A stretch of 64,000 bases of DNA from Dendrobates tinctorius (Eukaryota). Made by a program: the position numbers and the translations under genes. Below are positions 20,011-44,672 of the stretch, piece by piece. The stretch's first letter is position 1, and each line of letters begins with the position of its first letter. Where the stretch lies: contig NW_027361696.1 in NCBI RefSeq assembly GCF_039654945.1, positions 47,616,001-47,680,000 of the forward strand, in the 5' to 3' direction. The notes below the pieces were generated by a model that worked only from the letters and a program-made list of their open reading frames with translations, did no database searches and was not told where the DNA came from.

Positions 20011-21240
20011 TTAGTCAGAAGTCGCTAATGCCATCGTTACCACCCTTGTAGCATCTTCTGCCATAGCAGATAGGAAGCTGCTGAGTGTCCAGTAAGTCGT
20101 CCCAAAGGCGACCCCTCCACTTGCCAATGTGCCAATCTGCGGAACAAACTGATTTACACATGCTGTCACTATACGACCCATATCTGTCAGACCCTGACTC
20201 TTTAGATGATGGAAAACCAATTCATGAGTTATCTCCTCCAAAGCCATTGTGGTTCTGATCATTGATCTCAAATTTTCAAGATCTTTCCCAAAGGTATCCG
20301 ATAGCATTTTAAGGGACCTCGCGTCCAGGCCAAAAGCTTTCTTGTACTCTTCCAATATGTTGACCATGAGGGTGAGGTCACCATTGGCGGATAAATATGG
20401 AACACATGACATACTACTCGTCCCCAGCCTTTGTGACGTCGCAACGTTCATAGCGGAGATGATGGCCCATTTCCAGATTTGCGATAGAAAGGCCTTTTTC
20501 TTCTTCTCCACGGCCTGGTGGAAAAAATTGGGCTGAGACAGAAGAAATACATGTCTCTTGTGACTCTGAAGTTCGTCCTCTAGCGTTTTCTGGATCAAGT
20601 AGTAGTCATACTTTTCAGGTTCCAGACTGGAGATTAGAAACACTTGAGGGTTCTCGATACCTCCAGCTCGGAGACCATTTACACAGTCCTCGTGGATTTC
20701 CTTCAATAGATCTTCATCCTTGCAGTAGTTTGTCCTTCCTCGTCGACATCCTTTTAATACCGAGTCTATTTTGGATCTCAAAAAATAGAACTTCTTCCCC
20801 ATGGACTTGATGGCTTGTGCCAACAGGATGTGACATTCTCTGAAGCGTTCGGTTGTGATGATCAGAAAAAAATCATATTGGTGGAACTTCACCAATTGCA
20901 GATAATCCTTCGGTTTAAATACAGGACTTCCGATCCCGGGAAGGTCCCAGTATTTCACGTTTTTGTGATGGGGGTGTAAATAAGGTGATGGGACCGTGGT
21001 CGTCTCGACCACACCTGTCTTGGCAGAATCTTCTTCTTCATCGCCAAGGCCTCGGATTACATTGATAAAAGTTGACTTTCCAGATCCTGATTCTCCAGTT
21101 ACAGCAACATTCAATGTGACTTTGTCAATGTCTGCCAGGCATCTCTTCACACCTTCTACGGCTTCTGCAAGATCTCTATTTTCAAAGTAGTTCTTCATCT
21201 CCTGCAGTTCAGTTTCAGGAACTAAAAATTGGGAATCCAT
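20011..21240 (-). CDS. IRGC: Immunity-related GTPase (IRGC-like / interferon-inducible GTPase 5-like), copy 1, 409 aa
   Basis: Single coding exon. G1 GESGSGKS, switch I AKTGVVETT, G3 WDLPG, G4 RSKID, IRG C-terminal helices. Splice acceptor cccttag| at 21271-21270; in-frame stops upstream of the ATG. The symbol rests on family plus synteny, not a tree. Confidence 0.92.
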   Translation of the reverse strand: MDSQFLVPETELQEMKNYFENRDLAEAVEGVKRCLADIDKVTLNVAVTGESGSGKSTFINVIRGLGDEEEDSAKTGVVETTTVPSPYLHPHHKNVKYWDLPGIGSPVFKPKDYLQLVKFHQYDFFLIITTERFRECHILLAQAIKSMGKKFYFLRSKIDSVLKGCRRGRTNYCKDEDLLKEIHEDCVNGLRAGGIENPQVFLISSLEPEKYDYYLIQKTLEDELQSHKRHVFLLSQPNFFHQAVEKKKKAFLSQIWKWAIISAMNVATSQRLGTSSMSCVPYLSANGDLTLMVNILEEYKKAFGLDARSLKMLSDTFGKDLENLRSMIRTTMALEEITHELVFHHLKSQGLTDMGRIVTACVNQFVPQIGTLASGGVAFGTTYWTLSSFLSAMAEDATRVVTMALATSD

Positions 21241-21943
21241 ATGTTTTATCTTTCTTCAGTCTCAAGTGCCTAAGGGAAAAAAGATGACACGTTAAAAACC
21301 ATGGTGGGCAAAGTAAAGGCAAAAGTAAAAAATTTGCTTTGGGTTTGACCTTTTGAATCAAGCAATGTTGTCCTATAGCAGAAAATGTCCACTAATTGCT
21401 ATTTATTCTGGCCCTATACACATCCACACTTTGGCCAAGCATGCATGTGTTTTCAATAGGGTAAGACAAGTGAGCCGCTGCCGGCCACCTCTTTTAGGGG
21501 ATTATCTCTTCTGCTAAGAAAAGGATTGGACTTTGAAATGTATCATCTTTCTTTCCCGCCGACAACAACAACGTGGTGGCTTGTCCTAAGCCCTCATACA
21601 TATAAGATGACCGGTCCTTATGACATTTGTGTATGAATACATAGAAGCTGCAAAATTACTCCATTTGTTTTTAGTCACTGGATCATTTAAAAAAAAAAAA
21701 GGTACACATATCTGCACGCCCTTTGTCAATGAAACCTGCCAGTTTTATAAAAGGTGAGACTAGGATCACACGATGACTCTAGCAATTCTTTGACAAATTA
21801 CCCGATCAAAGACAGTAGCAACTAGTGATGAGCGAACATACTTGCCTCTCGATCGAGCATCAGGGTTCTGAGGTACGCATCGAGTATCGTGGGTGCTCAA
21901 GTGCCATGGCAGGCAATATCTGCATTTTTATTTACTGTCTTAA

Positions 21944-22549
21944 AGGGAATCTGTCACCCCATTTTTCGACTATCAGCTTCCGGCACCGCCATCAGGGGCT
22001 TATCTACAGCATTCTGTAATGCTGTAGATAAGCCCCCGATGTAACTTGGATGGTAAGAAAAAAAGAGTTAGATTATACTCACCCTGGCGTTTGGTCCGAT
22101 CCGATAGGTGTCGCCATCCCGTCCGGCTCCTCCTATCTCCATACGATGCTATCCTCCTCCTTGCTTCTCCCTCGGCTCCTGCGCAGGCGTACTTTATCTG
22201 CCCTGTTGAGGGCAGAGTAAAGTACTGCAGTGCGCAGGTGCCGGGACCTCTCTGACCTTTCCCGGCACCTGCGCACTGCAGTACTTTACTCTGCCCTCAA
22301 CAGGGCAGATAAAGTACGCCTGCACAGGAGCCGAGGTAGAAGCAAGGAGGAGGACTTCATCGCTAGAAGATGGGAGGCGCCGGACCGCGACACCCACCAC
22401 CTCCCGGTGATTATAATCTAACGTGTTTTTCTTATCTTTCCGGTTTCAATCGGGGGCTTGTCTACAGCATTTATTACAGAATGCTGTAGATAAGCCCCTG
22501 ATGGCGGTGGCAGCAGCTTATAGGCAGAAAATGGGGTGACAGATTCCTT
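21944..22549. mobile_element. T2/Kolobok-type palindromic MITE
   Basis: TTAA target, TIR AGGGAATCTGTCACC / GGTGACAGATTCCTT, long internal inverted repeats. Confidence 0.8.
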
Positions 22550-22628
22550 TTAGCAGCCAGAAAACATGCGTGGCAGGGACTCGAGCACCCTGATGCTCGA
22601 TCAAGCGCTGAGCATTCTCGCTCATCAC

Positions 22629-24885
22629 TAGAGATTGGGGAACCCCTGGATGTTCGGGTCCGGTCGAACAGTTAAAAATAAAAGTTTGGGTACCAGAACA
22701 GCACCTGACACCATTCACTTGAATGGGGGCCCCGAACATCCAGTGTTTGTCACGCTGGGATGTGTATGACAGCGCGGCAAGCACTGCTTCTGATAGGCGG
22801 TAAAATCAGCTTGAGCCCGCAGCTGTGATCAGAGGTAAAAGGTTTACCTCCAGTCACTGGCGTCAGCTGATGGGACTACATCAGCCTATGCCTGCTGCCG
22901 CTAATAACAGCAAGAGCCAATTCTGTCGCTTTGGGGTCCTGTTTGTAGGGTTGATGTCACCTTTGTATTGGCCGGTGACATCAAGCCCAAGGCTTAGTAA
23001 TGGAGAGGCGTTTATAAGACACCTATCCATTACTAATCTTAGTTATATGGTAAATAAACCCACAACCTGTATAAAGTCATTTATGTGAAAGAATGACACA
23101 CTCTTTAATATTAGATTCTAAATTAAACCATGCTCGCGTTATCACCCATTCTATTGAAGCAATCGTCTCCTGTAATAAAAAAAAAACAATCATATCCCTC
23201 ACCTGCCCTTCATTCTGTCCCATGCCGTAAACCATGTCTGGAGATAAACCGTTTTCAACCTCGACGGTGCCAAGATGCAACCGTCCAGGCTGAAAACCAA
23301 TGATGAATTAACTTCTGTGAGCGCAGTTCAGTTACTAGTGGTGACATCATCGAAGTTACTGCAGTTCACTGATGCTGTGTTTCCAGCCGGTCCAATGAAC
23401 TGCGGTGACCTTGGTGAGATCAGAGCTGAACCGTGAGACTTTTTTGTGCTAGCGGTGATCACGATAGTTCAGTGGCCTGTTCGATGCAGCTCATTCTTCC
23501 CTGCTTCTCAGCATGAACAGTCGCATGATGCCACCATTCATGCTGAAGAGCACATGTACAGATGGATTACGGCATAGGAGACTATGGATTCCAGCCCCCC
23601 CTCTATCCATTCCTCATCCCGCCATCCATCCTTATTCCTGCCATCCATCCCTCATCCATCCAGCCATCTATCCGTTCCTCATCCAGCCAGTCATCTCTCA
23701 TCCAGCCATACCTCAATCCATCCATCCCTCACTCATCCATCCAACCCTCATCCAGCCATATCTTCATTCCACTCATCCTCATTGACCGTCGGTAACCTCA
23801 ATGACATCACCATCTCATTCATTGGTGGTTCTCAGCCTGGACGGTCACATCTTGACACCGTCCAGGTTGAAAACTTTATCCCCAGACGTGGATTACGGCG
23901 TGTGACAGAACGACGGACAGGTGAGGGATTTTTTTTTTTTGTTCTTTTATTACAGGAGATGAGGGCTTCAATTTAATGATTTGATAGGTGTGTTTTGTTT
24001 TTTATTTCAAACGAAAGACTTTATACTTGCTGTGTCTTTACTTTCGATACCACTCTAGGATTAGTAATGGATAGGTGTCCTATAGATGCCTCTCCATTAC
24101 TAAGCCATGGGCTTGATGTCACTGGACAGTGCAAAGGTGATATCAACCCCACAGATATGAACCCCACTTGCCACTGATACAGGGCAAGTGGGAAGAGCCG
24201 TGCAAAGAGCCAGAATTGGCGCATTTAATAAATGCGCCTTTTCTGGTGCGGTTGGGGCGGACCAATATCCATTGCCCCTTACTAGCCCTCAGCTGTCTGT
24301 TTTAGCATAGCTGGTTGTCAGAAATAGGGGGGACCCCCACCCCGTTTTTTTAAATTATTTAAATTTAACAAAAAAGCGTAGGGAACCCTCTGTTCTTGAT
24401 ATCCAGCATTGCTAACGCTGACAGCTGAAGATTGCACTTTTTTGCTTGGCTGATCATCAAAAATACAGGGGAACCCATGCCGTTTTTCTTTTGTGCAGGC
24501 GGCTGCTGATGAATACTCCCATCAGCCACTGCCTACTCTCTCTGTTATTAGCGGCAGCAGGCAAAGGCTAATGGAAGCAATAGTCCCATCAGTCAACGCC
24601 AGGGACCGAAAGTAAACTTGTTACCTCTGATCACAGCTGCGGGCTTAAGCACTCATTTGACACCGTGGGAACCGCAGCTGTATGACTGGCTGTAATGATC
24701 TTACTGCCGATCAGAAGCAGTGTTTGCTGCGCTGTCATGCACATGACAGCATGAGAAACACCCGGTGTTCGGGGGGCGAACAGTAACACGGACTTCCTGG
24801 TGAACTCCGTGTTCGGTGTCTGTACCCGAGCAGCAGATGTTTGGTATGGACACCAAACTTTACTGTTCAGGTTCACCCATCTCTA
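22629..24885. mobile_element. Non-autonomous hAT element
   Basis: TIR TAGAGATTGGGGAAC / GTTCACCCATCTCTA, 8-bp TSD CTCATCAC (22621-28/24886-93). Confidence 0.85.
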
Positions 24886-25254
24886 CTCATCACTAGTAGC
24901 AACCTATAGAGATTAAGTGCAACTTGCTATCAAAATTCCAACAGTTGGGATTTAGTGCGATTTTTGTCAAAGTGACCATATTGGCAATCAATAGATATGG
25001 TATTACGCGTGGTCCTATCCTGACCGTACGTACACAACCACATCTCTATAGCTCCAGCTCACTCTTAGGATCGTAGCTAACATTTCAGATTTGTGTATAA
25101 CTTATTAAAGCTGTTCTTCTTGGGACAACCAAGAAAATATCCGATTCTTTGATGCACTCATTGTTGGAGACCTTGAAAACAATAATACAAAAATATAAAG
25201 TTGAAATTTTCTTGCTGTTGAAGTCACAAGATATCTGCAACAGCAAAGCGATAA

Positions 25255-25340
25255 CCAGTGAAACTGAAAGTGCAGAGTGTCGGAGATGTGTGTTATAAGC
25301 TCTGACCCTGCACATGGAGTTGCTTGCTTTTTATACCCTG
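25255..25340 (-). promoter_or_regulatory. Candidate promoter of IRG copy 1 (IRF-E/ISRE + TATA)
   Basis: AGTGAAACTGAAAGT 25258-25272 and minus-strand TATAAAAAG at about 25327-25335, in unique sequence about 4 kb upstream of the copy-1 acceptor. Confidence 0.55.
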
Positions 25341-25843
25341 TTTCTTCTCCCTTTTCCCCCCTTCTATAGACAGATCCGCCGGAAAAAGTGCTCTCTTACG
25401 TACCTTGCTCTCCGCTCTTTCTTCCTATTTATTGAAGTTCTAGATGTGATGTCATAGGGAGGTGCTTGTGCATAATGTGAATCCTAGAAATTGTGAAAGA
25501 GGAGATGTCACTGGGCGGGAGAGGATGTGATATAGCACAGAAGCTGCTGAGTGCAGGACAGACTATAAATAGTGGTCAGATCAAAAAGTATGAAAAATGT
25601 GTAAACATCATAACTAGGAGGCCAAAGTCTGAGGGTTTTCTTTCCACTCCCACCCAAAGAAAATGCATCCAGTATCTTTCTCTGCTTCGCCCCTCCTGGC
25701 CCTACAGCGGCTGCATGGTTTTTTTTGTCTTTGCAGGGTGGAAGTACGGCATTGATTTGCAACAGCGGAAATGTTTTTTGCAGATATCATGACTGATAAC
25801 TTTAGAGAATTAGCAGCCGGAAGGATGAGGATCCAAGCACTAA

Positions 25844-27965
25844 GGGTATGTTTCCACGGTCAGGATTTGACGCAGGTAAAATCTGCACCAGATCTGCATC
25901 AGAGGTCACTGGCAGGTCACCTGCCTTTTTGATGCTTTTTTTTTCATGCAGATTTGTATGCATTTTTTTGTAAGCTAAATAAAGCTATAATATTTAACAA
26001 AAAAAAAAGAATTGTGATGTAATTTCCTTGTCCAACCTCTTCTTTTACATACTCCATTGAAGAATGTTTACACACACAGATAGATAGATAATAGACAGAT
26101 AGATATGGGTTAGATAGACGGCACTCAGGACCGGAGCGTTCAGCTGCATAGAAATACATTCAGCTGCACATTCCGGTCCCAAGTGCAGTGCCGAATACAG
26201 AGGTGCGAGACTCATGCGAGTTTCTCGCATGTCTGACCCCGGTCTAATATGCAATGTCCTTTTCCTTTTTTTTTTTTTTTTTTTTTAATAATTTAAAAAA
26301 AAATGGTGTGGGCTTCTGCGCAATTTTCTGCGCCAGAGAGGGAAAGCCAGCTACTGGGGGACAATATTTATAGCCTGGGAAGGGGTTAATTCTCATGGAT
26401 ATTCCCAGACTTGGAATATCAGCCCACAGCTGTCTGCATAGCCTTTACTGGCTATTAAAATAGGGGTGCCCCCCAAAAATTAATAGCCAGAAAGACTATG
26501 CAGACAGCTGCGGGCTGAAATTCATAGCCTAGGAAGGGCCCCCCCCTGGTTACAAACTCCAGCACACAGCTGCCCCAGAAATGGTGCATCTGTAAGATGC
26601 GCCAATTCTGGCAATTATCCTCTCTCTTTCCACTGCCGAGTAGCGGTGAGCTATGGGGTAATAAGGGGTTAATGATTGTAAGGTAACATCAAGCCCGATT
26701 AGTAATGGAGAGGCGTCAGTAAGACGCCTCTCCATTACTAATCCTATAGTATGTAACGGGTTAAAAAAAAAACCAGCCAGAAAAAAGTATTAAATAAAAT
26801 ACCACACAGTTTTGCCATTTTATTATACGCCTAATTCCCCGAAGCCCTCGATCTAAAAAAAAAAAATAATAAACACAAATACTTTCTGTCCGACGTAGTC
26901 CTTAGGCCTCTTTCACACATCAGTTTTTTGCCTTCAGTCGCAATCCATCGTTTTTAGGGTCCAGTGACTGACGGTGGATCCGTTTTTTTCTCATAGACTT
27001 GTATTAGTGACGGATGGCCTCACGTTTCGTCCGTCGTTCACTGGATGAGTCAGAAATTTTGTGTCCATCGGGCGGGGATGACGGACAAAGTAACTTTTTT
27101 GTCTCCGTCGAAAAGTTGGACAGCGACGGATCCACCGTCCATCGTTGGCTATAATGGAAGCCTATGGGCACAGGATCCGTCACTGTCCATCAAATGATGG
27201 AATCCAGTGACGTATTCTGTTTTTTTTTTTTAAACTGTGCATGCTCCAATTATTATTACCAGGTAGGGCAGTCGAATCCAGCAAAAAAACAGATCCGTCG
27301 CATCAGTTTTTCACAACGTATCTGTTTTTTCCCAAAACTGCTGGATTGCGACTGATGGCAAAAAACTGATGTGTGAAAGAGGCCTTAAAAACGAGTGTCC
27401 CACGACGAGTCCAGCTCTGCTACATCTGGATGCATGACATCCAGACATAGCAGAGCTTGTAGATGACCGTCGGAGATCTCCAGCGGTCACCTGCACTGTA
27501 GTTATAATGGTAAGCTGACCGGGAGAACTAGCCTAGTGACCGGAGATAACCTCCGGTCATGTGCATGGCAGTTCTCGCAGTAACCTATCTCGAAAACTGC
27601 AGTGGACAGGGACTTCTGGCATTAGGAGGAGGTAAGACCTTATTTAAATTAGTACACATGGGTAGTAAGCTGCGTTTACGCAGTTATTACACGTGTGACT
27701 AATCATCAGATGCGGTTTTACCGCATCTAATGATAGTCTATGGTAAATTTACGGTGTGGAGACGAAGTGTTGCCGCATTGAAAACAGACATGCGTTCTGG
27801 AAAGACGCGCCACGTGTCCGTTTACGTGGGTCTATCGCCTGCGTCTTTATACGCATAGTGAAGACGAGATTTCATGAAATCCCCTCCACTATGCTGTAAT
27901 ATCTGGACACTGCGGCTGTACGCAGCGTCAAACACGCAGCGTTTCTTGACTGTGGAAACGTACCC
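25844..27965. mobile_element. Non-autonomous Harbinger-type element
   Basis: TIR GGGTATGTTTCCACGGTCAGGA / TCTTGACTGTGGAAACGTACCC, TAA TSD. Confidence 0.8.
26905..27384. mobile_element. Harbinger-type MITE nested in 25844-27965
   Basis: Perfect TIR GGCCTCTTTCACACATCAGTTTTTTGCC, TTA TSD. Confidence 0.88.
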
Positions 27966-28374
27966 TAACTGTTTTCAATGTAACCGAGCTAAAATATTTG
28001 CAAACCCAACAATAATCCTTTTGCAGAGAACCCTGCAAAACTCCTAATACCTGCAGCATCCCCCTCGCTTCTTCTTATCAGTAGGCACTTGCGATATTTA
28101 TGTGCGTGTCACTGCAACTTAAGCTGAGGCCTACACATAAGAAGGAGCAGATCCTGCAGATCTTTTTGCTCAACTCTAATAACCATTTCTTATCCACACT
28201 TCTTGAAAGTGCATTTGGACAAAAATCAAAGCCTCCAGATAACTTCCATTCCGGGAAAATTTTTCATTCTCAAGAAAGTTTTCCAACTCCTCAAGGAGTT
28301 TGGTATGTCTTCCTTTATTCCGGTCAGTCTGAAATAATTGATAAGTATGGCGGTGTGGATTTCTCAAACCTTAA

Positions 28375-28691
28375 GGGTACGTGCACACGCTGTGGAATGC
28401 TCTGCGGATTTGGCCGCGCAGATTTTGAAAAATCCGCAGGTAAATCTGCAGGTCAAAAGACCTGCGGATTGGCCTGCGGTTTTGCCCTGCAGTTTATCAT
28501 CTCTACAATGGAGATGGTAAACAGCAGCGGAATCCGCAGAAAGAATTGACATGTCAATTCTTTCTGCGGTTTAGAAACCGCAGCAAATCCGCGCGGAAAA
28601 ATCCGCACCGTCTGCACCGCGGTTTTTTAATATCCATAGGATATTATGATGCTGTACACCGCAGCAGAATCCGCAGCGTGTGCACACACCC
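28375..28691. mobile_element. Harbinger-type MITE
   Basis: TIR GGGTACGTGCACACGCTG / CAGCGTGTGCACACACCC, TAA TSD. Confidence 0.82.
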
Positions 28692-32740: not shown

Positions 32741-32766
32741 TAGATATTAGAAAAAACTTTTTAAAA

Positions 32767-32958
32767 GTGAGGGTGATCAGTGAGTGGAATATTCTGTCAT
32801 TCATGAGAGGTTGTGAGTTCTCCTTCAAAGGAAGTCCTCAAACAGAGGCTGGACAGACACCTGTCTGAGATGGTTTTGTGAATCCTGCTTTGAGCAGGGG
32901 GTTGGACACGATGACCTTGGAGGTCCCTTCCAACTATAACATTCTAGGATTCTATGAT
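32767..32958 (+). mobile_element. CR1 LINE 3' end
   Basis: ORF2 tail EVVSSPSKEVLKQRLDRHLS, GGTCCCTTCCAAC, terminal ATTCTAGG/ATTCTATG repeats. Confidence 0.85.
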
Positions 32959-34033: not shown

Positions 34034-34120
34034 ACAGTTGTGTGAAAAAGTGTTTGCCCCCTTCCTGATTTCCTATTCTTTTGCACGTTTGTCACACTTA
34101 AATGTTTCAGATCAACAAAC
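34034..34120 (+). mobile_element. Tc1 left-end fragment
   Basis: TA|CAGTTGTGTGAAAAAGTGTTTGCCCC typical Tc1 TIR start; no partner end seen. Confidence 0.6.
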
Positions 34121-34878
34121 AACTATTTGTAGCTAATAAAGATATCATTTTTTTATGGAATTCTATGACTGCTTCTAGTTTTTTCTTAAGCATGCTTTAT
34201 GCAGTTTTCCCGGTATGCTTCCATTAAATACACGAGTGAGTGGTAGGTGGCAATCTGCATTGATATTGTTGAAATCGTTTCCTTTCCACATGTGTTATGT
34301 TTACAACTATCTACTTATACTTTATAACTATGGGTTTAGTAATGGGGGCGTCTTATAGACACCTCTCCTTTACTAATCCCATGGGCTTGATGTCAGCGGC
34401 CATAAAAAAAGCTGACATGAACCCCAAAACTATTTTCCCACTTGTCACCGCACCAGGGCAAGTGGGAAGAGTGAGGTTAAGTGCCAGATTTGGTGCATCT
34501 TATTGATGCAGCAGTTTTGGGGCCACTGAGGGCTCATGTTATTAGGCTGGGAGAGGGGGACAATATCTATGACCCCTTCCCAGGCTATTAATATCAGCCC
34601 ACAGCTGTTAATTTGGCCTTTACAGTTTAGAATTTATAAGGAGACCCTACGTCATTTTTTCTGGAGTACCTCTCTAAACTAACCAGTAAAGGTTATGCAA
34701 ACAGCTGTGAGCTATTATAAATAATCCTGGCAACATTTAAGGCTAATGGACCCTTTTTCAGATTATTAATATTAGCCCCCAGCGGTCGGCTATTCAACTG
34801 CTGGTTATGAAAATTACTTGAGAGCACACACAGATTTTTTTTAAGTAATTTATTTATTTAGAAATAAAAAAACAAGTA

Positions 34879-35075
34879 CAGAGTGGGCCATTTATATGGT
34901 TAAACCTGGGTTGGCCATTTATATAGATACACCTAAATAAAATGGGAATGGTTGGTGAAATCAACTTCCTGTTTGTGGCACGTTAGTATATGGGAGGGGG
35001 GAAACTTTTCAAGATGGGTGGTGGCCATTTTATAAATGGCCCACCCAGGTGTATCCATATAAATGGCCATCCCTG
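34879..35075. mobile_element. Short TA-flanked MITE
   Basis: TIR CAG.G..GGCCATTTATATGG, TA TSD. Confidence 0.65.
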
Positions 35076-35471
35076 TATAGAAAAAGAAACATACAAAGCA
35101 CTGATTATATAGCACACATACATATTTCTTTCTATGTATCTATCACATTCCTCATCGCTATTTCTATCTTTGAACATCTTTGATACATAACATTCTTTAA
35201 TTTTTATGCTGCATTTCATTCCATACGGGTAACACGGACAGCACACTAACACATGCACATATTTTCGGTCAGAACGAGTTCTTGTCCAGCAATAAACAAT
35301 TCATCTCAAAGGCAATAACCGGCAAATAATGCAACACAAAGATAATGTCAATACTTTGTCTCACATTTATAAATCATTGAATCAGTTCTTAATTTCTTTG
35401 TCAAAAATGTTTTCATTGTATCCAATAACTAGAAATGTTTTGTATGCTTTATTACTATAGGATAAAGATGC

Positions 35472-36668
35472 CTAAACGGGTGTCTCCAAAGCTTTCGTAA
35501 GAACACGCACTGCATCTTCAGCAATCTCTTTCAGAAAGCCATAGAGCATCCAATAAGTAGTAGCAAAGGAGATGCCCCCTGCTGCTAGGCTACCTAGCAT
35601 TGGGACGTTACTAACAACATACTCCACTATCATGAGACCTCCTGTGGCCCCTCTAGTAAGTAAAGTGGTGACAAGCTCTTTATTTATCTCTTTTATGACC
35701 AAAGGGGACTTGATCACAGATTTTAATTCACTGACGTCTTTACCAAGCTTGTCAGCCAACTTTTCCAGAGAGTTTTCATCCAAGCCAAATGCATTCTTAT
35801 AGCTTGTCATGGCGTTCACCAGAATTCCTATATCACAAACAACAGACAGGCCTGGGACTGGGACTGCAGCCACTCCACAAGAAAGAGAGGCCCACTTCCA
35901 TATGTCCTTTCTGAAAGCCTGACGCTTCTTCTCAAGGACTGGCAAAGAAATGTTGGGTAGAGAGATCAGGAATATGTGTCTCTTGTGTTCTGGAAGTTCC
36001 TTTTCTAGAGTGTCCTCCATTTCATGGAAATCGTACTTGTCCAGGTCCAGAAATGAGAGGAGAAACACTTGGGGCTGTGGGATTCCCCCATCTTTAAGAC
36101 TTTGAATGCAGTTATTTCTAATTTCATTGAGCACATTCTCTTCATTGAATGTCTTCTTCCTTCGGATCATGGAAGCATTCAAGTCGGAGTCAACTTTGGA
36201 TCTCACAAAGTAGAATTTCTTGTTCATAGCTTGAATCGCCTTCGCTAAGTCAATGTCGTTTTGCTTAAAACGTTCTGATGATAAAATGATGAAAAAGTCA
36301 TAACGACTAAATTCAACAGACTGGAGATAACTGTCTGCCACAAAATTTGGAGTTCCTATTCCTGGAAGATCCCAAACAGTTACATTAGGATACTGAGGAT
36401 GGACGTATGGAGTTGGCACCTTTGTTGTCTCCACAACACCAGTTTTGGCTGAGCCTTCTTCTTCATCATCCATGCCACGGATGGCATTGACAAATGTTGA
36501 CTTTCCTGTTCCTGATTCTCCTGTAATGGCAATGTTCAACGGTGCATTTTCTATTTCCCTGAGAGACTTGCTGAGTCTTTCAGTTGCTGTACAGAGGTCA
36601 CCATCTTCTAAAGCTGACCGAATGTCCTGGACTTCTTCATCACTGATGATGTCAAAAGAGGAATCCAT
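35472..36668 (-). CDS. IRGC: Immunity-related GTPase (IRGC-like), copy 2, 398 aa
   Basis: G1 GESGTGKS, AKTGVVETT, WDLPGIGT, RSKVD, VAAVPVPGLSVVCD. Acceptor tcttcag| at 36684-36683. AATAAA at 35453-35448. Confidence 0.93.
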   Translation of the reverse strand: MDSSFDIISDEEVQDIRSALEDGDLCTATERLSKSLREIENAPLNIAITGESGTGKSTFVNAIRGMDDEEEGSAKTGVVETTKVPTPYVHPQYPNVTVWDLPGIGTPNFVADSYLQSVEFSRYDFFIILSSERFKQNDIDLAKAIQAMNKKFYFVRSKVDSDLNASMIRRKKTFNEENVLNEIRNNCIQSLKDGGIPQPQVFLLSFLDLDKYDFHEMEDTLEKELPEHKRHIFLISLPNISLPVLEKKRQAFRKDIWKWASLSCGVAAVPVPGLSVVCDIGILVNAMTSYKNAFGLDENSLEKLADKLGKDVSELKSVIKSPLVIKEINKELVTTLLTRGATGGLMIVEYVVSNVPMLGSLAAGGISFATTYWMLYGFLKEIAEDAVRVLTKALETPV

Positions 36669-37329
36669 TTTCAGTTATTAGTCTGAAGAAAAATAAGAAA
36701 GAATTTATGAGAGCAAAACCTTTACCCACTAACAGCTCAACTGATATCACTACATTCTCAGGAATATATTAGCTCTGGTAGAGTCTGACGGGACCACCAG
36801 AGTAGTTGAGGATTCTCCAGTATAGAAACCATGCTCTAACAAGTCATAATGATGTGGTCTCCCAAAATTTTGTTTCAAGATATTGATCAAACATTGGTTT
36901 TAGGACCTTGTTTAAGGAAAGACCTGGTCTGGTCAAAAAAGGTCTGACCACAGTGAACTCCACAATTCCCGAGAATAGAGGAGCCGATCAACTTAGATGT
37001 GTCTGCTGTTGAAATACAGAAATGTTTCCATTCTTATTTGGAAAAGCAGCATTGAAACAAAGTGAGAAGTTGGTTGAGTGGCGCACATGTGGAAATTTGT
37101 GGTTTTTTCCAATGCAACCCTCAATTCATCATTGGCCTTCTTCAGTCTAATCCTTATAAAGTGCTTCTCCATCAATATAACTTTAGTTTTTTCAGGAATA
37201 TTTCTGTTAATATTCTCCCAATTCCTCCTAGTTTTCACAGTATTCACTCTACAGTTCTTTATATTTGAACCAGGAAGGAAGGTTCAACAATTGTTAGACA
37301 TTTTTGGAAGCTTAAGGCAATGATCCTTA

Positions 37330-37736
37330 AGGGCCTGTCACACTAAGCGATATCGCTAGCAATATCGCTATAACGTCACTGGTTTTTGTGACGTTATAGC
37401 GATATTGCTAGCGATATTGCTATGTCTGATACTTACCTTCGACCGCTCCCCCGCTGGTTATCGCTGATCGCGCGAGAACGTCCTGGGCCGTTTCTCGTCG
37501 TCAGCTTCCTGCTGGACTTCCTTCTGTGACGAAGAGCGACGCGTGGACGCGGGCGGGAGGACGTCAGGATCGCCTCGTCTGACCGGTAAGTAGCGACCCC
37601 CGACCCCTGCGATGTCGCTGGTGAGATGTGCCTGTGTGGCAGCTCACTAGCGACCACTTAGCGATGTACCAGCGATCCTGACCGCGTCATATCGCTGGTC
37701 GGGATCGCTGGTACATCGCTAAGTGTGACAGTACCT
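37330..37736. mobile_element. Harbinger-type MITE, close relative of 13797-14203
   Basis: TTA TSD, TIR ..CTGTCACAC, near-identical internal sequence. Confidence 0.88.
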
Positions 37737-37869
37737 TTAGTCATCAAGTTACTCACAAACTCTTAACATGCTCACTCCTAATTCTTTTCCTTGTCTACCG
37801 CCATGTAATTTGCATATCCTTGCCTTTAGTGCTTACTTTGCATAATACACAAGAAAAAGAAGTGCTAAA

Positions 37870-38187
37870 TAGTAAATAATGATGAGCGAACGTGCTCGGA
37901 TAATGTATTATCCGAGCATGTTCATTTACTAACCGAATGACTTTGTCGTGCTCGAAAAATATGTTCGAGTCCCCGTGGTTGCATGTCTCACGGCTGTTCG
38001 ACAGCCGCAACACGTACAAGGATTGCCTATTTGTTAAGCAATCCCTGCATGTGTTGCAGGTGTTAAGCAGCCGTGAGACATGCAGGCGGGAGGACTCCAA
38101 CATATTATTAGAGCACGCCAAAATCACTTGGTTAGCACACGAACATGCTCGGATAACACCTTATCCGAGCACATTCACGCATCAATA
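37870..38187. mobile_element. Palindromic hAT-type MITE
   Basis: GATGAGCGAACGTGCTCGGATAA arms, GTGCTAAA on both flanks. Confidence 0.7.
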
Positions 38188-39200
38188 GTGCTAAACAGAA
38201 ACACCCACACGACAGCCCACGTAAACCCAGAGAGCTTGCACAGCTGTAATTTTACTATTAAGCTTTGAACATGCCTCCAGCAAATATCTAGAAATAAATA
38301 TAATTTAATATAAGTTTACATGTCATAACAATATATCGCAAATGCATTTAGTAGAAATTACAGTAATAGAACGGTAGGTTGTCACCATCTCATCAATGTT
38401 GACATCGATGTAATGCTAAAAATCAAAAACTGATGACCATCAAAAAGGGGACATTTAGCCTGAGACATACAGTGAAAGTCAGTGTCAATTTTCTTGAAGA
38501 TTACTCGTGTACCTACAGGGTGGTTGTCAGGGGCAGACAAAACAGTGGTGCAACTTGTATAGCCGCACAGTGCCCAAGACGGTAAGGGGACTACCTCCAC
38601 CTTCGAAGGAGAAGAAATTGTACATTATGAGGAGCTCTTGGTCTGCAAAGTTCCCATATATTTTTTCTTGCACAGGGGCCCTCTTCTGTTTATGTCTGCT
38701 ACTAGAAGTCAAGGTGGCTAAGATAGAAAAAAAACTATCTGCGACATCAGAAGACACCAGTATGACATATGCCACTCGCAGATCCTAGTATCGCAATAGA
38801 AGAGGTTTCATCTTTGTCTCTACTTAATGATTTAAAGCAGTGTCCACTTTGGCAACCATTATTATCCAGTGGATTTCACCATAAACAATTGATTCAATAT
38901 TTTTTCTATTGAGATAACTTACAATTAGTTATTGTTGGCCTGAGAGCTGATTATTGAATGGCTTTATTGCCTTTGTCTGGAAAATAAATCATACGTGTCA
39001 ATACATCATGGGACTATCAGACAGAATGATTGCTTATTTTTACAGCTCCTTTTATGGCCCCACTGTATTAAGGTTTGATATTGAGTCTCTCCATATGTTG
39101 GGAAACTACAACGCCCAGCATGAACACTGTAACTCCCCAACAGTTGGAGAGCCTTAGCCCATATAGAAAAGGTTGAGTCCAAAAAGACCAACTGTCCTTC

Positions 39201-39884
39201 TCAAAAACGCTCTTTTTCTAGGGTCTTCTTCAAGAGTTCAAAGTCATATTTGTCCATTTGTAAGCAGGACAAGAGGAAGACAATAGGTTCCTCCACTCCG
39301 CTGTCTCTAAGACCTGTGATACAATTATCTCGTATCTCATGCAATATTCTCCTCTCGTTGTATGTCTTCCGTCTTCGAAGCTTGCTGGCTCTTAAGTCAG
39401 TGTCTATTTTGTTCCTTACAAAGTAAAACTTCTTCTTCATAGAACAGATCTTCTTGGCCAGTTCCATGTCGGAGTGTCTCACCCTTTCAGAAGCTATGAT
39501 AATAAATAAGTCATAGTGATCATAGTTGATTGATTGGATAGTCCTGGTAGTTCCTGTACCTGGAAGATCCCAAAATAGCAGATTTCTCAGCTTGGGATGT
39601 GGATAGGCGGTGGGCTCCATTGTGGTCTCCACTACTCCTGTTTTAGCAGCATCTTCTTCTTCGTCATTGTGAAGACCACGGATGGCATTAACAAAGGTGG
39701 ACTTTCCAGAGCCCGACTGTCCCATTATGGCAATGTTTATTATGGTATTTCTAAGGTCACAAGAGTTACTTTCCTGAGTGGTATCACTACACGCTGTGTC
39801 GCACAAGGTACTCTCATGTAGCGCTCTTATGATGTCTTCCACTTCCGCTTCACAGGAAGCACAGAATATTTCATCGGTGTACAT
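39201..39884 (-). CDS. Truncated immunity-related GTPase, copy 3 (N-terminal region + G domain only, 227 aa; functional short form or pseudogene)
   Basis: GQSGSGKS, AKTGVVETT, WDLPGTGT, RNKID, VFLLS; stops at LEKERF* just after the G domain. Acceptor ctccaaag| at 39904-39903. Confidence 0.85.
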   Translation of the reverse strand: MYTDEIFCASCEAEVEDIIRALHESTLCDTACSDTTQESNSCDLRNTIINIAIMGQSGSGKSTFVNAIRGLHNDEEEDAAKTGVVETTMEPTAYPHPKLRNLLFWDLPGTGTTRTIQSINYDHYDLFIIIASERVRHSDMELAKKICSMKKKFYFVRNKIDTDLRASKLRRRKTYNERRILHEIRDNCITGLRDSGVEEPIVFLLSCLQMDKYDFELLKKTLEKERF

Positions 39885-40232
39885 AATCCCTTGTTAATCA
39901 GACTTTGGAGAGAAAATAAGATTCAGTGTTTTTGAACTGTTCGCTTTAAATACATTAAAACTTATAGTGAACCTGAGTTGCAAACTGTATTTTGCTTTTG
40001 AGTTGCATTTACAATTCTACAGCCTTCAGAGCCGAAATCAATCAGCACTTCCTGCTTGTATAGTGCCTGAATAGAGCTTGTTTTGGTGATAAGTATTTAT
40101 CTAATTGTACAGTCACTATGCTGACACCCCCAAGCTGTTAAGGGTGTGTATAAAGACAGAGCAGAATAGTGAATGCAGCTCTAGGTATAATATAGAGGGT
40201 AATTCAGGATTCATGCAAAAATAAGGATGCAA

Positions 40233-42105
40233 TCTAATACATAAAGCTGAATATGTGTTTGTATGTATGTTTTCATGTATGTATGTATGTATGTGTGTAT
40301 GTCCGGGATTGGCATCTGCACCGTCGCAGCTACAGCCACAAAATTTTGCACAGTCACACGTCTGGACCCTGAGAGCGTCATAGACTATGTTGTGAGGTGA
40401 AATTTTAACCCCGCGCGTTCCAATTCACCAAACAATTTTGCCCCTAGGTACATAATGGGGAAAAAGTGTAGGTATGTATGTGTGTATGTCTGGGATTGGC
40501 ATCTGCACCGTCGCAGCTACAGCCACAAAATTTTGCACAGTCACACGTCTGGACCCCGAGAGCGTCATAGGCTATGTTGTGAGGTGAAATTTTAACCCCG
40601 CGCGTTCCAATTCACCAATTTTGCCCCTAGGTACATAATGGGGAAAAAGTGTATGTATGTATGTGTGTATGTCCGGGATTGGCATCTGCACCGTCGCAGC
40701 TACAACCACAAAATTTTGCTCAGTCACGCGTCTGGACCCCGAGAGCGTCATAGGCTATGTTGTGAGGTGAAATTTTAACCCTGTACGTTCCAATTCACCA
40801 AACAATTTGGCCTTATTCTTATCATTTCTGTGGTGTTATCGTCCTTATGTAAAGCTGGAAATAGCACAATTTATTACCGTGCCAACACAGACCACCCTTT
40901 GACACAGACTGCAGGGGGAGCCCAGTATTACACAGGATAGGATTAGATACACGGCTCAGAAGTCAGTATCACACAGGATAGGATTAGATACACAGCTCAG
41001 CAGTCAGTATCACACAGGAGAGGATTAGACACATGGCTCAGCAGTCAGTATCACACAGGATAGGATTAGATACACAGCTCAGCAGTCAGTATCACACAGG
41101 ATAGGAATAGATATAAGGCTCAGCAGTCAGTATCAAACAGGATAGGATTAGATACACAGCTCAGCATTCAGTATCACACAGGATAGGAATAGATAGACTG
41201 CTCAGCAGTCAGTATCACACAGGATAGGATTAGATACACAGCTCAGCACACAGTATAACACAAAATAGTATTAGATACACGGCTCAGCAGACAGTATCAC
41301 ACAGAATAGGATTAGATACACGGCTCTGCAGTCAGTATCACACAGGATAGGATTAGGTACACGGCTCAGCAGTTAGTATCACACAGGATAGGATTAGATA
41401 CACTGCTCAGCAGTCAGTATCACACAGGATAGCGTTAGATACACGGCTCAGCAGACGGTATCACACAGGACAGGATTAGATACATGGCTCAGCAGTCAGT
41501 ATCACACAGGATAGGATTAGATACACGGCTGAGCAGTCAGTAACGCAATAGGATTAGATACACAGCTCAGCAGAAAGTATCACACAGGAGAGGTTTAGGT
41601 ACACAGCTCAGCAGCCATTATCACACAGGATAGGGTTAGATACACAGCTCAGAAACAGGATGTGCCAAAGGAGAGGACATTTTCATTGCAAGAATTCCAC
41701 TCATTCCATCTGATTTGTTTTTTAATTTTAAACGCCTCCAGTTTCCAGTTCAAATCCTATTTGCAATGTCCATTAACAATGCTCAGGGACAGTCCTTGAA
41801 AGTATTAGGGATCAATTTGCAATCTCCATGCTTTTCTCATGGTCAACTTTATGTGGTCTGTTCAAGAGTTGGAACTGCCAAAAATCTGTTCATCTTTGCA
41901 TCGAAAGGAAAAACCAAAAATCTTGAAGGAGTTGAAAATAAAATACTATCAATACTTGGGTAATTGTTTAGTTAATTTGTGATGCAAATCTGTAGTGTTG
42001 AATACATGATGTGAAATGTTTTTATAAGCAATATAATTATTATAATTTGTTATAACTAACCACAGTTGGTTACTATGCCCAGGCAACGCCGGGCTCTTCA
42101 GCTAG
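40233..42105 (+). mobile_element. Helitron with Pif1-helicase remnant, in the intron upstream of IRG copy 3
   Basis: A|TC...hairpin...CTAG|T; helicase C-terminus at 41655-41922 (IARIPLIPSD..FKRLQFPV..FAMSINNAQGQSL..FSHGQLYVVCSRV); about 180-bp segment triplicated at 40290-40810; 41-bp array 40926-41652. Confidence 0.9.
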
Positions 42106-42879
42106 TATATATGCAAAGTTGAGGTTTTCTGCAATATACTTTATTTGCATTGTCGGGGTCAACCCTGTAACATGTCCTTTATTTCCATTACAGGATTCCG
42201 TATTTCTAGTCATAAAATTCAGAGGTTTATCGACAGTGCCCCATTATAACCACAGTGCCTCCTATCCATCTACAGTACCTCAATCACCTCCACAATGTTC
42301 TGTTCACTGTCTACCACTATTAAAGTTCCTTTGATTTCTTCCACAGAGATCCCATCAGTGTCCCAGTGCTACTGATAAAGTTACAATACTCTCATTGCCC
42401 TATAACCATCTACAAAGTCATAATACCCTTCTCATAACCACATGTGTCTCCAGCACAATGCCCCCACACCATCATTATACCCTCCCCATAACCACATGCA
42501 TCTCCAGAACAGTGCCTGTAAACCATCATAATACCCTCCTAATAACATTTGTCTCAAGCACAGTGCCCCTACACAATAACCTCTTCATAACCACATGCGT
42601 CTCCACCACAAGTGTGCCACCTACAGCATTATAATATTCTACTTATAATCACAGTACCCCTGTTGAAACTACCTTACCCCAACAACATAATAATATCCTC
42701 ATAACCATTGGAACACCATCGCTGCCACAGTGCCCCATCATAATACTCCCTACACAGCAATAGTACCCATATTACTGCCACTGTGGCCCATATAAAATCA
42801 TAATACTCTTTTCATAGCCACAGTATCCCCATGACCTCCATAACAAACACCTCTCGTTACCGCCACAGTACCACAACAA

Positions 42880-43985
42880 AGTCATAACATCCTCCACCAT
42901 CACCACCACAGGACCCCAGGAGTCATAACATCCTCCACCATCACTAACACAGGACCCCAGGAGTCATAACATCCTCCAACACTACCACAGGACCCCAGGA
43001 GTCATCACATCCTCCACCATCACTACCACAGAACACCAGGAGTCATAACATCCTCCACCATCACTAACACAGGACCCCAGGAGTCATAACATCCTCCAAC
43101 ACTACCACAGGACCCCAGGAGTCATAACATCCTCCACCATCACTAACACAGGACCCCAGGAGTCATCACATCCTCCACCATCACTAACACAGGACCCCAG
43201 GAGTCATAACATCCTCCAACACTACCACAGGACCCCAGGAGTCATCACATCCTCCACCATCACTACCACAGAACACCAGGAGTCATAACATCCTCCACCA
43301 TCACTAACACAGGACCCCAGGAGTCATAACATCCTCCAACACTACCACAGGACCCCAGGAGTCATAACATCCTCCACCATCACTAACACAGGACCCCAGG
43401 AGTCATCACATCCTCCACCATCACTAACACAGGACCCCAGGAGTCATAACATCCTCCAAAACTACCACAGAACCCCAGGAGTCATCACATCCTCCACCAT
43501 CACTACCACAGAACACCAGGAGTCATAACATCCTCCACCATCACTAACACAGGACCCCAGGAGTCATAACATCCTCCAACACTACCACAGGACCCCAGGA
43601 GTCATCACATCCTCCACCATCACTACCACAGAACACCAGGAGTCATAACATCCTCCACCATCACTAACACAGGACCCCAGGAGTCATAACATCCTCCACC
43701 ATCACTAACAGAGGACCCCAGGAGTCATCACATCCTCCACCATCACTAACACAGGACCCCAGGAGTCATAACATCCTCCAACACTACCACAGGACCCCAG
43801 GAGTCATCACATCCTCCACCATCACTACCACAGAACACCAGGAGTCATAACATCCTCCACCATCACTAACACAGGACCCCAGGAGTCATAACATCCTCCA
43901 ACACTACCCCAGGAGTCATCACATCCTCCACCATCACTACCACAGAACACCAGGAGTCATAACATCCTCCACCATCACTACCATG
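42880..43985. repeat. 38/41-bp minisatellite with 120-bp higher-order period
   Basis: CAGGACCCCAGGAGTCATAACATCCTCCACCATCACTAACA variants in 41+38+41 order. Confidence 0.92.
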
Positions 43986-44386
43986 GTACCCCTAAAATCA
44001 CAACATCCTCAATCATCTCTATTACAGGACCCCAATATTCACAACATCCTCTACCATCACTATCGCAGGACCCCACAAAGTCATAACATCCTCCACTATA
44101 ACTGCAGGATCCAAGAGTCATACCATCCTCCACCATCACTACTGCAAGACCTCAAGATTGACAACATCCTCCGCTATCACTATCGCAGGACCCCAAGAAT
44201 CATAATATCCTCCACCATCTCTACTGCAGGACTCCAAGTCACAACCTCCTCCATTATCAATACCACCGGACCCCAAGAGTCATAACCTTCACCACCATGA
44301 CTACCACAAGACCTCAAGAGTCACAACAGCCTCCTCACTCCCTACTAATGTCTCACAAATCCCCAATAAAGAGCGCCCATATTTAC

Positions 44387-44672
44387 CTCTTGGTGTTAGA
44401 GTAATGGCGTCTTGTCCTCTGAGTTCTGGAACTTCTACTGACTTTTTTTTATCTGTGCAAAGGATCAAGTTTCTGTTCTAATTATCGAAAACTGAAAGCG
44501 AAACTGCCAAAGTTTCTTGTTTCCTTTCTCTCTCTTTTTTCCATGAAGGAAATGAAATCCTTCACCTCTTGCACCATCTGCTGCCCAACTACATACAATG
44601 CAAGGGAATGCTATTACCCTGTGACATATATGGGAAATTCCTTTTAAATACTTAACCCCTTAAGGACTTTCC
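44387..44672 (-). promoter_or_regulatory. Candidate interferon/NF-kB-responsive IRG promoter with short non-coding exon 1
   Basis: ISRE GAAAACTGAAAGCGAAACT 44487-44505; AGTTTCTTGTTTCC 44511-44524; Ets-IRF-like GGAAATGAAA 44548-44557; NF-kB GGGAAATTCC 44632-44641; TATA-like GATAAAAA on - at about 44446-44453; minus-strand donor AG|GTAAAT at 44387/44386. Confidence 0.7.

What the first reader, a model, noticed from the sequence alone, without database searches (positions are those of the whole stretch)
20011..44672. Expanded, apparently interferon-inducible IRG cluster at the ancestral SMG9-IRGC locus
Seen: three same-strand GKS-type IRG paralogues, each a single coding exon behind a splice acceptor, tail-to-tail with SMG9, with ISRE motifs upstream of copies 1 and 3. 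Known: human IRGC lies tail-to-tail with SMG9 on 19q13 and is single-copy, testis-expressed and not IFN-induced, while mouse IFN-inducible IRGs sit elsewhere. Inference: in this frog the IRGC locus is a diversified cell-autonomous immunity cluster, so IFN inducibility may be ancestral and lost in mammalian IRGC. No copy has an N-terminal MG myristoylation signal or the GMS P-loop.
Basis: partly seen in the sequence, partly recalled or inferred. Interest (0 to 1): 0.72.

Follow-up and report, generated by a model that had tools for sequence, protein, structure and literature searches.

The report
Frog IRG immune GTPase cluster beside SMG9
Next to the SMG9 gene, where mammals keep the sperm gene IRGC, this poison frog has two complete immunity-type IRG GTPase genes and one short GTPase-domain-only copy, with conserved interferon-type DNA motifs at their 5' ends; they share IRGC's position but not its branch of the family tree, and interferon control is untested.

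Summary
On the minus strand lie c1 (20011-21240, 409 aa), c2 (35472-36668, 398 aa) and c3 (39201-39884, 227 aa). All three have GKS P-loops, no Met-Gly start, and one coding exon behind a splice acceptor. SMG9's last coding exon ends at 17823 on the plus strand, 2.2 kb from c1's stop. c3 is a G-domain-only copy. Its stop sits at the same place in Phyllobates, it is spliced and transcribed, and its dN/dS is 0.26, so it is probably functional and not decaying.

A strict IRF-E/ISRE pattern occurs only twice in 64 kb, each time in a conserved 5' block. One lies 133 nt past c1's non-coding first exon. The other lies about 100 nt upstream of a conserved splice donor at 44387.

Turtle and lizard IRGC-type genes also lie tail-to-tail with SMG9, so the shared position is real. 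In the trees, however, all frog copies form an anuran radiation outside the amniote IRGC-type clade. An exclusive c1+IRGC clade is rejected; a single amphibian clade is not.

Interferon induction is plausible but untested. c1 and c2 are already annotated in relatives as "interferon-inducible GTPase 5-like".

The parts
5581..5700 (+). SMG9 exon encoding the P-loop region (matches human SMG9 residues 195-234)
   Evidence: phmmer against PDB SMG9 chains, E 7e-14
17432..17575 (+). SMG9 penultimate coding exon (human residues 448-495)
   Evidence: E 5e-19 against PDB SMG9
17746..17823 (+). SMG9 last coding exon with its stop codon (human residues 496-519)
   Evidence: E 8e-9 against PDB SMG9. The public gene call of 510 aa ends here.
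20011..21240 (-). c1: complete GKS IRG GTPase of 409 aa, the SMG9-adjacent copy. Its coding exon begins at 21269.
   Evidence: PF05049 E 2e-89. E 4e-73 to mouse Irgb10. Orthologues occur about one per anuran species. dN/dS 0.12-0.13.
25404..25467 (-). c1 non-coding first exon (the 5' end is a minimum), donor GCAAG|GTACGT
   Evidence: The 5'UTR of cDNA contigs L004/L005 from another hyloid frog maps here (local alignment score 49 against a background of 26) and is joined directly to the coding exon. The block is conserved in Anomaloglossus and Rhinoderma.
25259..25276 (-). IRF-E/ISRE-like element TCTGCACTTTCAGTTTCA, 133 nt downstream of the exon-1 donor. A TATA-like GGGTATAAAAAG lies at 25327-25338.
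   Evidence: Strict motif hit. Sixteen bases are invariant across three hyloid frogs, and one half-site is changed in Rhinoderma.
35472..36668 (-). c2: complete GKS IRG GTPase of 398 aa. The transcribed exon runs from about 35039 to 36682.
   Evidence: PF05049 E 7e-116. E 2e-93 to Irgb10 and Irga6 over the full length. RNA contigs in four runs from four studies end at the acceptor. dN/dS 0.076.
39201..39884 (-). c3: G-domain-only IRG ORF of 227 aa. The exon begins at 39902 and the transcript continues to about 38310.
   Evidence: PF05049 profile positions 5-216. No C-terminal half in the window. The Phyllobates orthologue is 235 aa and stops at the same place. Spliced RNA contigs exist. dN/dS 0.26.
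44387..44483 (-). Candidate shared non-coding first exon of c3 and c2 (inferred), donor CAAGAG|GTAAAT. The 5' limit is approximate.
   Evidence: The donor and its block are conserved in Phyllobates. The c2 and c3 contigs carry 16-96 further letters that fit nowhere in 34800-40250, and both overrun their acceptor by the two letters AG.
44487..44505 (-). ISRE AGTTTCGCTTTCAGTTTTC. A kB-like GGAATTTCCC lies at 44632-44641 and a TATA-like element at 44641-44650.
   Evidence: Strict motif hit. Conserved in Phyllobates. Coordinates.

Best explanation
What it is. The interval is a real cluster of IRG (p47, PF05049) GTPase genes on the 3' flank of SMG9 in a dendrobatid frog.
- c1 and c2 are complete GKS-type IRGs. 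Their G1-G4 motifs are intact, and the sequence carries a Glu in the VVETT stretch where, from memory, Irga6 has its catalytic Glu.
- c3 is a G-domain-only copy that is transcribed and kept under selection.

Gene structure. Each gene is one coding exon spliced to a non-coding exon several kilobases upstream. IRF-E/ISRE elements sit beside those 5' exons, and c2 and c3 probably share one ISRE-flanked first exon.

Likely mechanism (inferred). IRF/STAT complexes raise transcription after interferon or infection. c1 and c2 then act like mouse Irga6, Irgb6 and Irgb10, as GTP-dependent oligomers on pathogen-containing membranes. c3 may modulate c2 through the G-domain interface.

Evolution. The locus is positionally homologous to amniote IRGC. 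The frog genes are nevertheless an anuran-specific radiation and not members of the IRGC clade. They are at best co-orthologues of IRGC, and on the maximum-likelihood tree they are an older paralogous lineage.
For: - Domains and motifs.
- SMG9 adjacency in the window, Anomaloglossus, Rhinoderma, turtle and lizard.
- Exon structure from RNA: c2 and c3; c1, from another species.
- Purifying selection: dN/dS 0.13 (c1), 0.076 (c2), 0.26 (c3).
- Only two strict IRF-E hits in 64 kb, both in conserved 5' blocks.
- Strict IRF-E hits upstream of the turtle and lizard IRGC-type genes.
- Trees and AU tests.
- Toad 'Irgc' transcripts are expressed in spleen and differ between populations (PMC6580278).
Against: - No induction data exist. 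The tissues of the RNA runs are unknown.
- The strict motif was chosen after the sites were seen. The loose motif is only weakly enriched.
- The c1 element lies in intron 1, or in an alternative first exon, and not upstream of the mapped first exon. One half-site is altered in Rhinoderma, and no strict hit lies within 10 kb upstream in Bufo or Rana.
- The shared first exon of c2 and c3 is inferred, because the unmatched contig letters were not printed.
- Deep tree branches are short and shift with sampling.
- The only mammalian IRGC available was a truncated, long-branched part of a merged Myotis gene model.
Confidence: 0.6

Rival explanations
1. c1 is the frog's working equivalent of IRGC. 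On this reading it is a conserved housekeeping or germ-line GTPase and not an interferon effector, and only c2-type genes are immune.
For: - c1 holds the exact IRGC position beside SMG9.
- It occurs about once per anuran species and follows the species tree.
- It is under strong purifying selection, dN/dS 0.12-0.13. [quoted passage not shown]
Against: - An exclusive c1 + IRGC-type clade is rejected.
- A 16-base IRF-E-like element beside exon 1 is invariant in three hyloid frogs.
- Kaneda et al. link IRGC1 to the sperm fibrous sheath, which they say Xenopus and zebrafish sperm lack (PMC9232189).
- Ranitomeya imitator has two c1 copies.
Confidence: 0.15
2. The ISRE-like motifs are not working interferon switches. 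The genes would then be expressed constitutively, and the motif conservation would reflect other factors or recent common ancestry.
For: - The loose ISRE pattern is not clearly above chance: 3 hits against 1.09 expected, and 10 of 100 shuffles reach this.
- The 44.5 kb block is compared only with Phyllobates, at 88% overall identity.
- The c1 element lies downstream of the mapped first exon.
- c2 is well represented in all four RNA runs, with no known stimulation.
- Mouse Irga6 has a dedicated constitutive liver promoter (PMC2848866, abstract listed).
Against: - Both strict hits in 64 kb fall within about 130 nt of 5'-exon donors of IRG genes.
- The c1 element is one of the best-kept stretches in a 72%-identity alignment of three species.
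- Comparable strict hits lie upstream of the turtle and lizard IRGC-type genes.
- Bekpen et al. found ISRE and GAS elements at most transcribed mouse IRG promoters (PMC1297648).
Confidence: 0.25
3. c3 is a decaying pseudogene, transcribed only because it lies inside the c2 transcription unit.
For: - It has a premature stop relative to full-length IRGs, and the C-terminal helical domain is missing.
- Its contig depth is low, 4-9 against 30-115 for c2, although contig depth is a poor measure.
- Its branch is long.
- Neither the window's c3 protein nor the Phyllobates one is in the public protein collection by exact sequence.
Against: - The 227-235 codon frame is open in the window, in Phyllobates and in organism B. 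All length differences are in frame, and the stop is at the same codon.
- dN/dS is 0.26 at dS 0.18.
- The G1-G4 motifs are intact.
- Contigs are spliced precisely at its own acceptor.
Confidence: 0.2

Closest known systems
Mouse GKS-type IRG effectors (Irga6/IIGP1, Irgb6/TGTP, Irgb10)
   Same: c2 and c1 align over their full length, G domain plus helical domain, at E 2e-93 and 4e-73. They share the GKS P-loop, the DxxG and (S/N/T)KxD motifs, a single long coding exon behind 5' non-coding exon(s), and ISRE-type motifs near the 5' exons, as Bekpen et al. describe (PMC1297648).
   Different: The chromosomal locus differs. Bekpen et al. place the interferon-inducible mouse genes on chromosomes 11 and 18, and these frog genes lie beside SMG9. 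There is no Met-Gly start for N-myristoylation. Interferon induction and membrane targeting are untested.
Amniote IRGC (IIGP5, CINEMA)
   Same: c1 has the same position and orientation relative to SMG9 as the turtle and lizard IRGC-type genes. A preprint gives the mammalian order as Kcnn4-Smg9-Irgc. c1 is conserved and close to single copy. RefSeq names c1 and c2 relatives 'interferon-inducible GTPase 5-like'.
   Different: The frog copies lie outside the clade holding the reptile IRGC-type and Myotis IRGC sequences, and the exclusive grouping is rejected. Bekpen et al. found no ISRE or GAS within 10 kb of mouse or human IRGC, no interferon induction, and strong testis expression (PMC1297648). 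The frog genes carry conserved IRF-E/ISRE motifs.
Human IRGM (truncated G-domain IRG) and the mouse GMS regulators
   Same: c3, like human IRGM as described by Bekpen et al., is little more than a G domain of the IRG family and is transcribed.
   Different: c3 has a GKS P-loop, not GMS. It sits within the anuran radiation near the c2-type genes. No regulatory role has been shown.
Predicted 'tandem' IRG proteins of turtles, geckos and teleosts (G-only unit followed by a full unit)
   Same: The order is the same as c3 followed by c2 on one strand: a roughly 200-270 residue G-domain unit directly upstream of a full IRG unit.
   Different: In those proteins the two units are each other's closest relatives, which points to separate, lineage-specific duplications. 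In the window an in-frame TAA lies between the c2 acceptor and the c2 ATG (read from the sequence), and RNA contigs keep c3 and c2 apart.

Membership tests
IRG / p47 GTPases (Pfam PF05049 IIGP) | IIGP domain covering both the G domain and the helical domain | tested here: met
   c1 covers profile positions 5-339 and c2 covers 1-374 of 375. c3 covers only 5-216, the G domain.
IRG / p47 GTPases (Pfam PF05049 IIGP) | G1 P-loop GxxxxGKS (GKS subclass) with G3 DxxG and G4 (N/T/S)KxD | tested here: met
   The P-loops are GESGSGKS, GESGTGKS and GQSGSGKS. DLPG and (S/N)K(I/V)D are present in all three copies.
IRG / p47 GTPases (Pfam PF05049 IIGP) | Whole ORF on one long exon behind 5' untranslated exon(s) | tested here: met
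   Acceptors lie at 21270, 36683 and 39903. RNA contigs end there with further unmatched letters. A cDNA from another frog joins a 5' exon to the c1 coding exon.
IRG / p47 GTPases (Pfam PF05049 IIGP) | Interferon-inducible transcription through ISRE/GAS elements | tested here: inconclusive
   There are two strict IRF-E/ISRE hits in conserved 5' blocks. No expression data after interferon or infection were available.
IRGC (IIGP5) orthology group | Lies tail-to-tail with SMG9 | tested here: met
   The c1 stop at 20011 faces the SMG9 stop at 17823. The same arrangement holds for the turtle and lizard IRGC-type genes.
IRGC (IIGP5) orthology group | Falls inside the clade of amniote IRGC proteins | tested here: not met
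   A 100/97 split separates all frog copies from the reptile IRGC-type and Myotis IRGC sequences. The exclusive clade is rejected at p 6e-51. A single amphibian clade is not rejected, p 0.32.
IRGC (IIGP5) orthology group | No ISRE or GAS near the promoter; testis-restricted and not interferon-induced | tested here: inconclusive
   A conserved IRF-E-like element lies 133 nt past c1 exon 1, unlike the absence reported for mouse and human IRGC (PMC1297648). The tissue pattern was not testable here.
IRGM-type (GMS) regulators | GMS P-loop | tested here: not met
   All three copies are GKS.

The most novel reading that the evidence does not exclude
The SMG9 flank was already a multi-gene, IRF/ISRE-driven IRG immune cluster in early tetrapods. 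Mammals kept a single gene there, which lost interferon control and was re-used in sperm as IRGC. Frogs and reptiles kept the immune wiring. In poison frogs, one promoter would drive both a full effector (c2) and a selected G-domain-only partner (c3). c3 would act as a built-in regulator or decoy, a role that GMS/IRGM proteins fill in mammals.
Probability: 0.25. Interest if true: 0.65.

Novelty: new member of a known kind. Interest (0 to 1): 0.42.

Why it matters
IRGC is the odd member of the IRG family. [quoted passage not shown] Kaneda et al. also state that IRGC1 was not found in Xenopus or zebrafish and suggest it arose with the sperm fibrous sheath.

This window shows that in hyloid frogs the IRGC position beside SMG9 is filled by a conserved IRG gene carrying a conserved IRF-type element, with further IRG genes next to it. 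Reptile IRGC-type genes at the same position also carry such motifs. That makes the hypothesis [quoted passage not shown] directly testable by expression assays in frogs and reptiles.

The finding also offers a natural pair, a full IRG and a selected G-domain-only IRG probably sharing a promoter, for studying how IRG activity is regulated in animals without GMS proteins.

It is not a new kind of system. c1 and c2 are ordinary IRG family members already annotated in related frogs.

Tried and rejected
1. Further IRG copies, or the missing half of c3, in the window: tblastn down to E 50 found none.

2. Mammalian IRGC sequences for the tree. The first two word searches listed only frog, reptile and fish proteins. 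A profile of the reptile clade brought back one merged Myotis model, whose first 365 residues served as the only mammalian IRGC.

3. Mapping the 5'UTR of a c2-type cDNA from another frog (L007) onto the window or onto Phyllobates: no hit above background. L006 turned out to be genomic.

4. Laying reads across the ISRE exon itself. I avoided this because the intron between 40.3 and 44.3 kb is full of long tandem arrays and the reads tool turns such stretches away. I laid 34800-40250 instead. As a result, the letters that join the c2 and c3 exons to their 5' exon were not seen.

5. SMG9 within 10 kb of the c1-type gene in Rana temporaria and Bufo gargarizans, and of the Group I gene in Microcaecilia: not found. 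This is uninformative, because those genomes are large and the flank is limited to 10 kb.

6. c3 as an orthologue of the N-terminal G-only units of 'tandem' IRG proteins: rejected, because those units cluster with their own C-terminal units.

7. c3 and c2 as one fused reading frame: rejected. An in-frame TAA lies between the c2 acceptor and the c2 ATG (read from the sequence), and no contig joins the two.

8. GAS (TTCNNNGAA-type) sites: too frequent by chance to carry weight, and the one beside the 44.5 kb ISRE is not kept in Phyllobates.

Full report
SOURCE. The window is from a dendrobatid frog assembly (GCA_039654945.1). c2 is 96% identical to a Phyllobates terribilis protein and 93% to a Ranitomeya protein. 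Earlier notes of this scan call the species the dyeing poison frog; I did not check that name.

WHAT IS THERE. Three IRG-family ORFs lie on the minus strand.
- c1: 20011-21240, 409 aa.
- c2: 35472-36668, 398 aa.
- c3: 39201-39884, 227 aa.

Pfam IIGP (PF05049) matches c1 at E 2e-89 and c2 at E 7e-116, the latter over profile positions 1-374 of 375. It matches c3 only over positions 5-216. tblastn of the three proteins against the whole window finds no fourth copy. After c3's in-frame stop, weak similarity runs on to 39144 and then ends, so the C-terminal helical half is absent.

c1 and c2 are 48% identical, and c3 is 50-53% identical to c2. All three have a GKS P-loop, DLPG and (S/N)KxD. They also carry a Glu in the VVETT stretch, where from memory Irga6 has its catalytic Glu. 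None begins Met-Gly. c2 and c1 align over their full length to the solved mouse Irgb10, Irga6 and Irgb6 structures, with best E-values of 2e-93 and 4e-73.

NEIGHBOUR. Plus-strand exons at 5581-5700, 17432-17575 and 17746-17823 match human SMG9 residues 195-234, 448-495 and 496-519.

GENE STRUCTURE AND TRANSCRIPTION. Each ATG lies 14-29 nt behind a polypyrimidine-AG acceptor. The coding exons start at 21269, 36682 and 39902.

I laid contigs of four runs from four studies on 34800-40250. They cover the exons and leave bins such as 36802-37165 empty, apart from a few highly repeated stretches, so they behave as RNA.
- c2 contigs run from 35039 or 35356 to 36684 and then carry 27-96 further letters.
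- c3 contigs run from about 39228 to 39904 and then carry 16-28 further letters.
- No well-supported joint places those letters inside the stretch.

Both sets overrun the acceptor by the two letters AG, so the upstream exon ends in AG. c3 transcripts continue past the stop to about 38310.

For c1, two cDNA contigs of the orthologue from another hyloid frog (L004, L005) have a 5'UTR that maps to window 25467-25404. That 5'UTR is joined directly to the start of the coding exon. This defines a non-coding first exon with the donor GCAAG|GTACGT.

INTERFERON-TYPE MOTIFS. The loose ISRE core GAAANNGAAAS occurs three times against 1.09 expected. The stricter IRF-E form GAAASYGAAASY occurs only at 25260 and 44494, against 0.13 expected; 1 of 100 shuffles reaches two hits. 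That pattern was chosen after the sites were seen, so the figure is optimistic.

Position and conservation carry more weight.
- The c1 element lies 133 nt past the exon-1 donor, in intron 1 or in an alternative first exon behind a TATA-like box at 25327-25338. Sixteen bases, TCTGCACTTTCAGTTT, are invariant in the window, Anomaloglossus and Rhinoderma, within an alignment of 72% mean identity. Rhinoderma changes the last half-site.
- The second element, AGTTTCGCTTTCAGTTTTC at 44487-44505, lies about 100 nt upstream of a consensus donor whose last exon base is 44387. A kB-like GGAATTTCCC lies at 44632-44641. All of these are kept in Phyllobates.

The donor ends in AG, and it lies in one of only two non-repeat blocks upstream of c3 that are conserved with Phyllobates; the other is 42233-42660. 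I therefore infer that c3 and c2 share this first exon. This is inference, because the joining letters were not printed.

SELECTION.
- c1 against Anomaloglossus gives dN/dS 0.13, and against Rhinoderma 0.12.
- c2 against Phyllobates gives 0.076.
- c3 against Phyllobates gives 0.26 over 227 codons at dS 0.18.

The Phyllobates c3 orthologue is an open 235-codon frame that stops at the same codon. Organism B differs from the window in c3 by in-frame insertions of 15 and 3 nt only. c3 is thus a maintained G-domain-only gene, not a fresh pseudogene. Neither c3 protein is in the public protein collection by exact sequence.

IS THIS THE IRGC LOCUS? By position, yes.
- In a turtle (Chelonoidis, L008) and a lizard (Podarcis, L009), the 412-435 aa IRG lies tail-to-tail with SMG9. 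RefSeq and Ensembl name members of that clade IRGC: 'Interferon-inducible GTPase 5' in Pogona and 'Immunity related GTPase cinema' in Salvator.
- A preprint states the mammalian order Kcnn4-Smg9-Irgc.
- The c1 orthologue is SMG9-adjacent in Anomaloglossus and Rhinoderma.
- Rhinoderma has another IRG 8 kb upstream, and the turtle has a 1269-aa multi-IRG gene 7 kb upstream. Extra IRG genes at this locus are therefore not special to this frog.

IS IT THE IRGC CLADE? No.

In a careful tree of 80 proteins, a branch with 100/97 support separates two groups.
- Group I holds the reptile IRGC-type proteins, Myotis IRGC, a 598-aa squamate clade, lungfish, coelacanth, caecilians and one salamander lineage.
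- Group II holds another salamander lineage, some teleosts and every anuran sequence, including c1, c2 and c3.

Within the anurans:
- c1-type is a clade (100/99) with about one gene per species that follows the species tree;
- c2-type is a multi-copy clade (98/95);
- c3 is a long branch near c2-type.

Forcing c1-type together with the amniote IRGC-type costs 81.7 log-likelihood units (AU p 6e-51). Forcing all amphibian sequences into one clade costs only 6.9 units (p 0.32). A second, broader quick tree keeps the anurans together (100) as sister to a salamander lineage (95). It leaves that group in a polytomy with the IRGC-type clade.

The frog genes may therefore be collective co-orthologues of IRGC or an older paralogous lineage. 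They are not IRGC itself.

Caveats: the only mammalian IRGC available was the first 365 residues of a merged Myotis model with a long branch, deep branches are short, and both constraint groups were named after a tree had been seen.

WHAT IS KNOWN. Bekpen et al. (PMC1297648) found no ISRE or GAS within 10 kb of mouse or human IRGC, no interferon induction, and strong testis expression. They found ISRE/GAS elements at most other transcribed mouse IRG promoters. Kaneda et al. (PMC9232189) state that IRGC1 was not found in Xenopus or zebrafish and propose that it arose with the sperm fibrous sheath. Strict IRF-E hits lie 870 and 610 bp upstream of the turtle and lizard IRGC-type coding starts. 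A cane-toad spleen study lists five differentially expressed 'Irgc' isoforms (PMC6580278). c1 and c2 orthologues are already annotated in RefSeq as 'interferon-inducible GTPase 5-like'.

VERDICT.
The locus homology is real and interferon control is plausible, with conserved elements to test. The proteins do not fall in the IRGC clade, copy 3 is only a G domain, and no induction has been shown.
- This is a new member of a known kind. Interest is moderate, and rests on the testable origin story for IRGC and on the selected G-domain-only partner gene.

Noticed in passing
window 45000-52000 (+): GC-rich remnant of a Ty3/gypsy-type LTR retrotransposon. Protease, reverse transcriptase, RNase H and integrase pieces lie in several broken frames. 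Described only.
   Followed up: partly
window 40280-40812, 40923-41652, 42418-42636, 42880-44334: Long tandem arrays fill the presumed intron between the ISRE exon and c3: 183 bp x 3, 41 bp x 18, 54 bp x 4 and 41 bp x 36. The 41-bp array is also present at the same place in Phyllobates.
   Followed up: partly
window 34800-35163 and 37166-38257: RNA contig depth runs in the thousands here, with many small joints and loose ends. These look like transcribed, highly repeated (transposon-like) sequence flanking c2.
   Followed up: no
window 1-2150, 3080-4200, 8700-9730: Long runs of repeated translated units in SMG9 introns suggest tandem repeats, including a GC-rich one (seen in the translations and the composition profile).
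   Followed up: no
P0028, P0036, P0045, P0086, P0105, P0194 (turtle, gecko and teleost proteins): Many predicted 600-700 aa 'IRG5-like' proteins consist of a 200-270 aa G-only unit followed by a full IRG unit. The two units of a protein are each other's nearest relatives. They could be real tandem proteins or merged gene models.
   Followed up: partly
P0192 (Myotis lucifugus 'Immunity related GTPase cinema', 709 aa): This gene model merges two IRG genes. Residues 1-365 are IRGC. Residues 400-709 are a second IRG that is slightly closer to the reptile IRGC-type proteins (52% against 49%). This hints at a second IRG beside IRGC in this bat.
   Followed up: no
L008 1-2932 (Chelonoidis) and L012 1-2020 (Rhinoderma): Further IRG genes lie 7-8 kb from the SMG9-adjacent IRG in a turtle (a 1269-aa multi-IRG model, head-to-head) and in Darwin's frog (409 aa, same strand).
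   Followed up: partly
P0245 and P0246 (Ranitomeya imitator): Two c1-type proteins at 90% identity or more occur in one species, so c1 is not strictly single-copy in dendrobatids.
   Followed up: no
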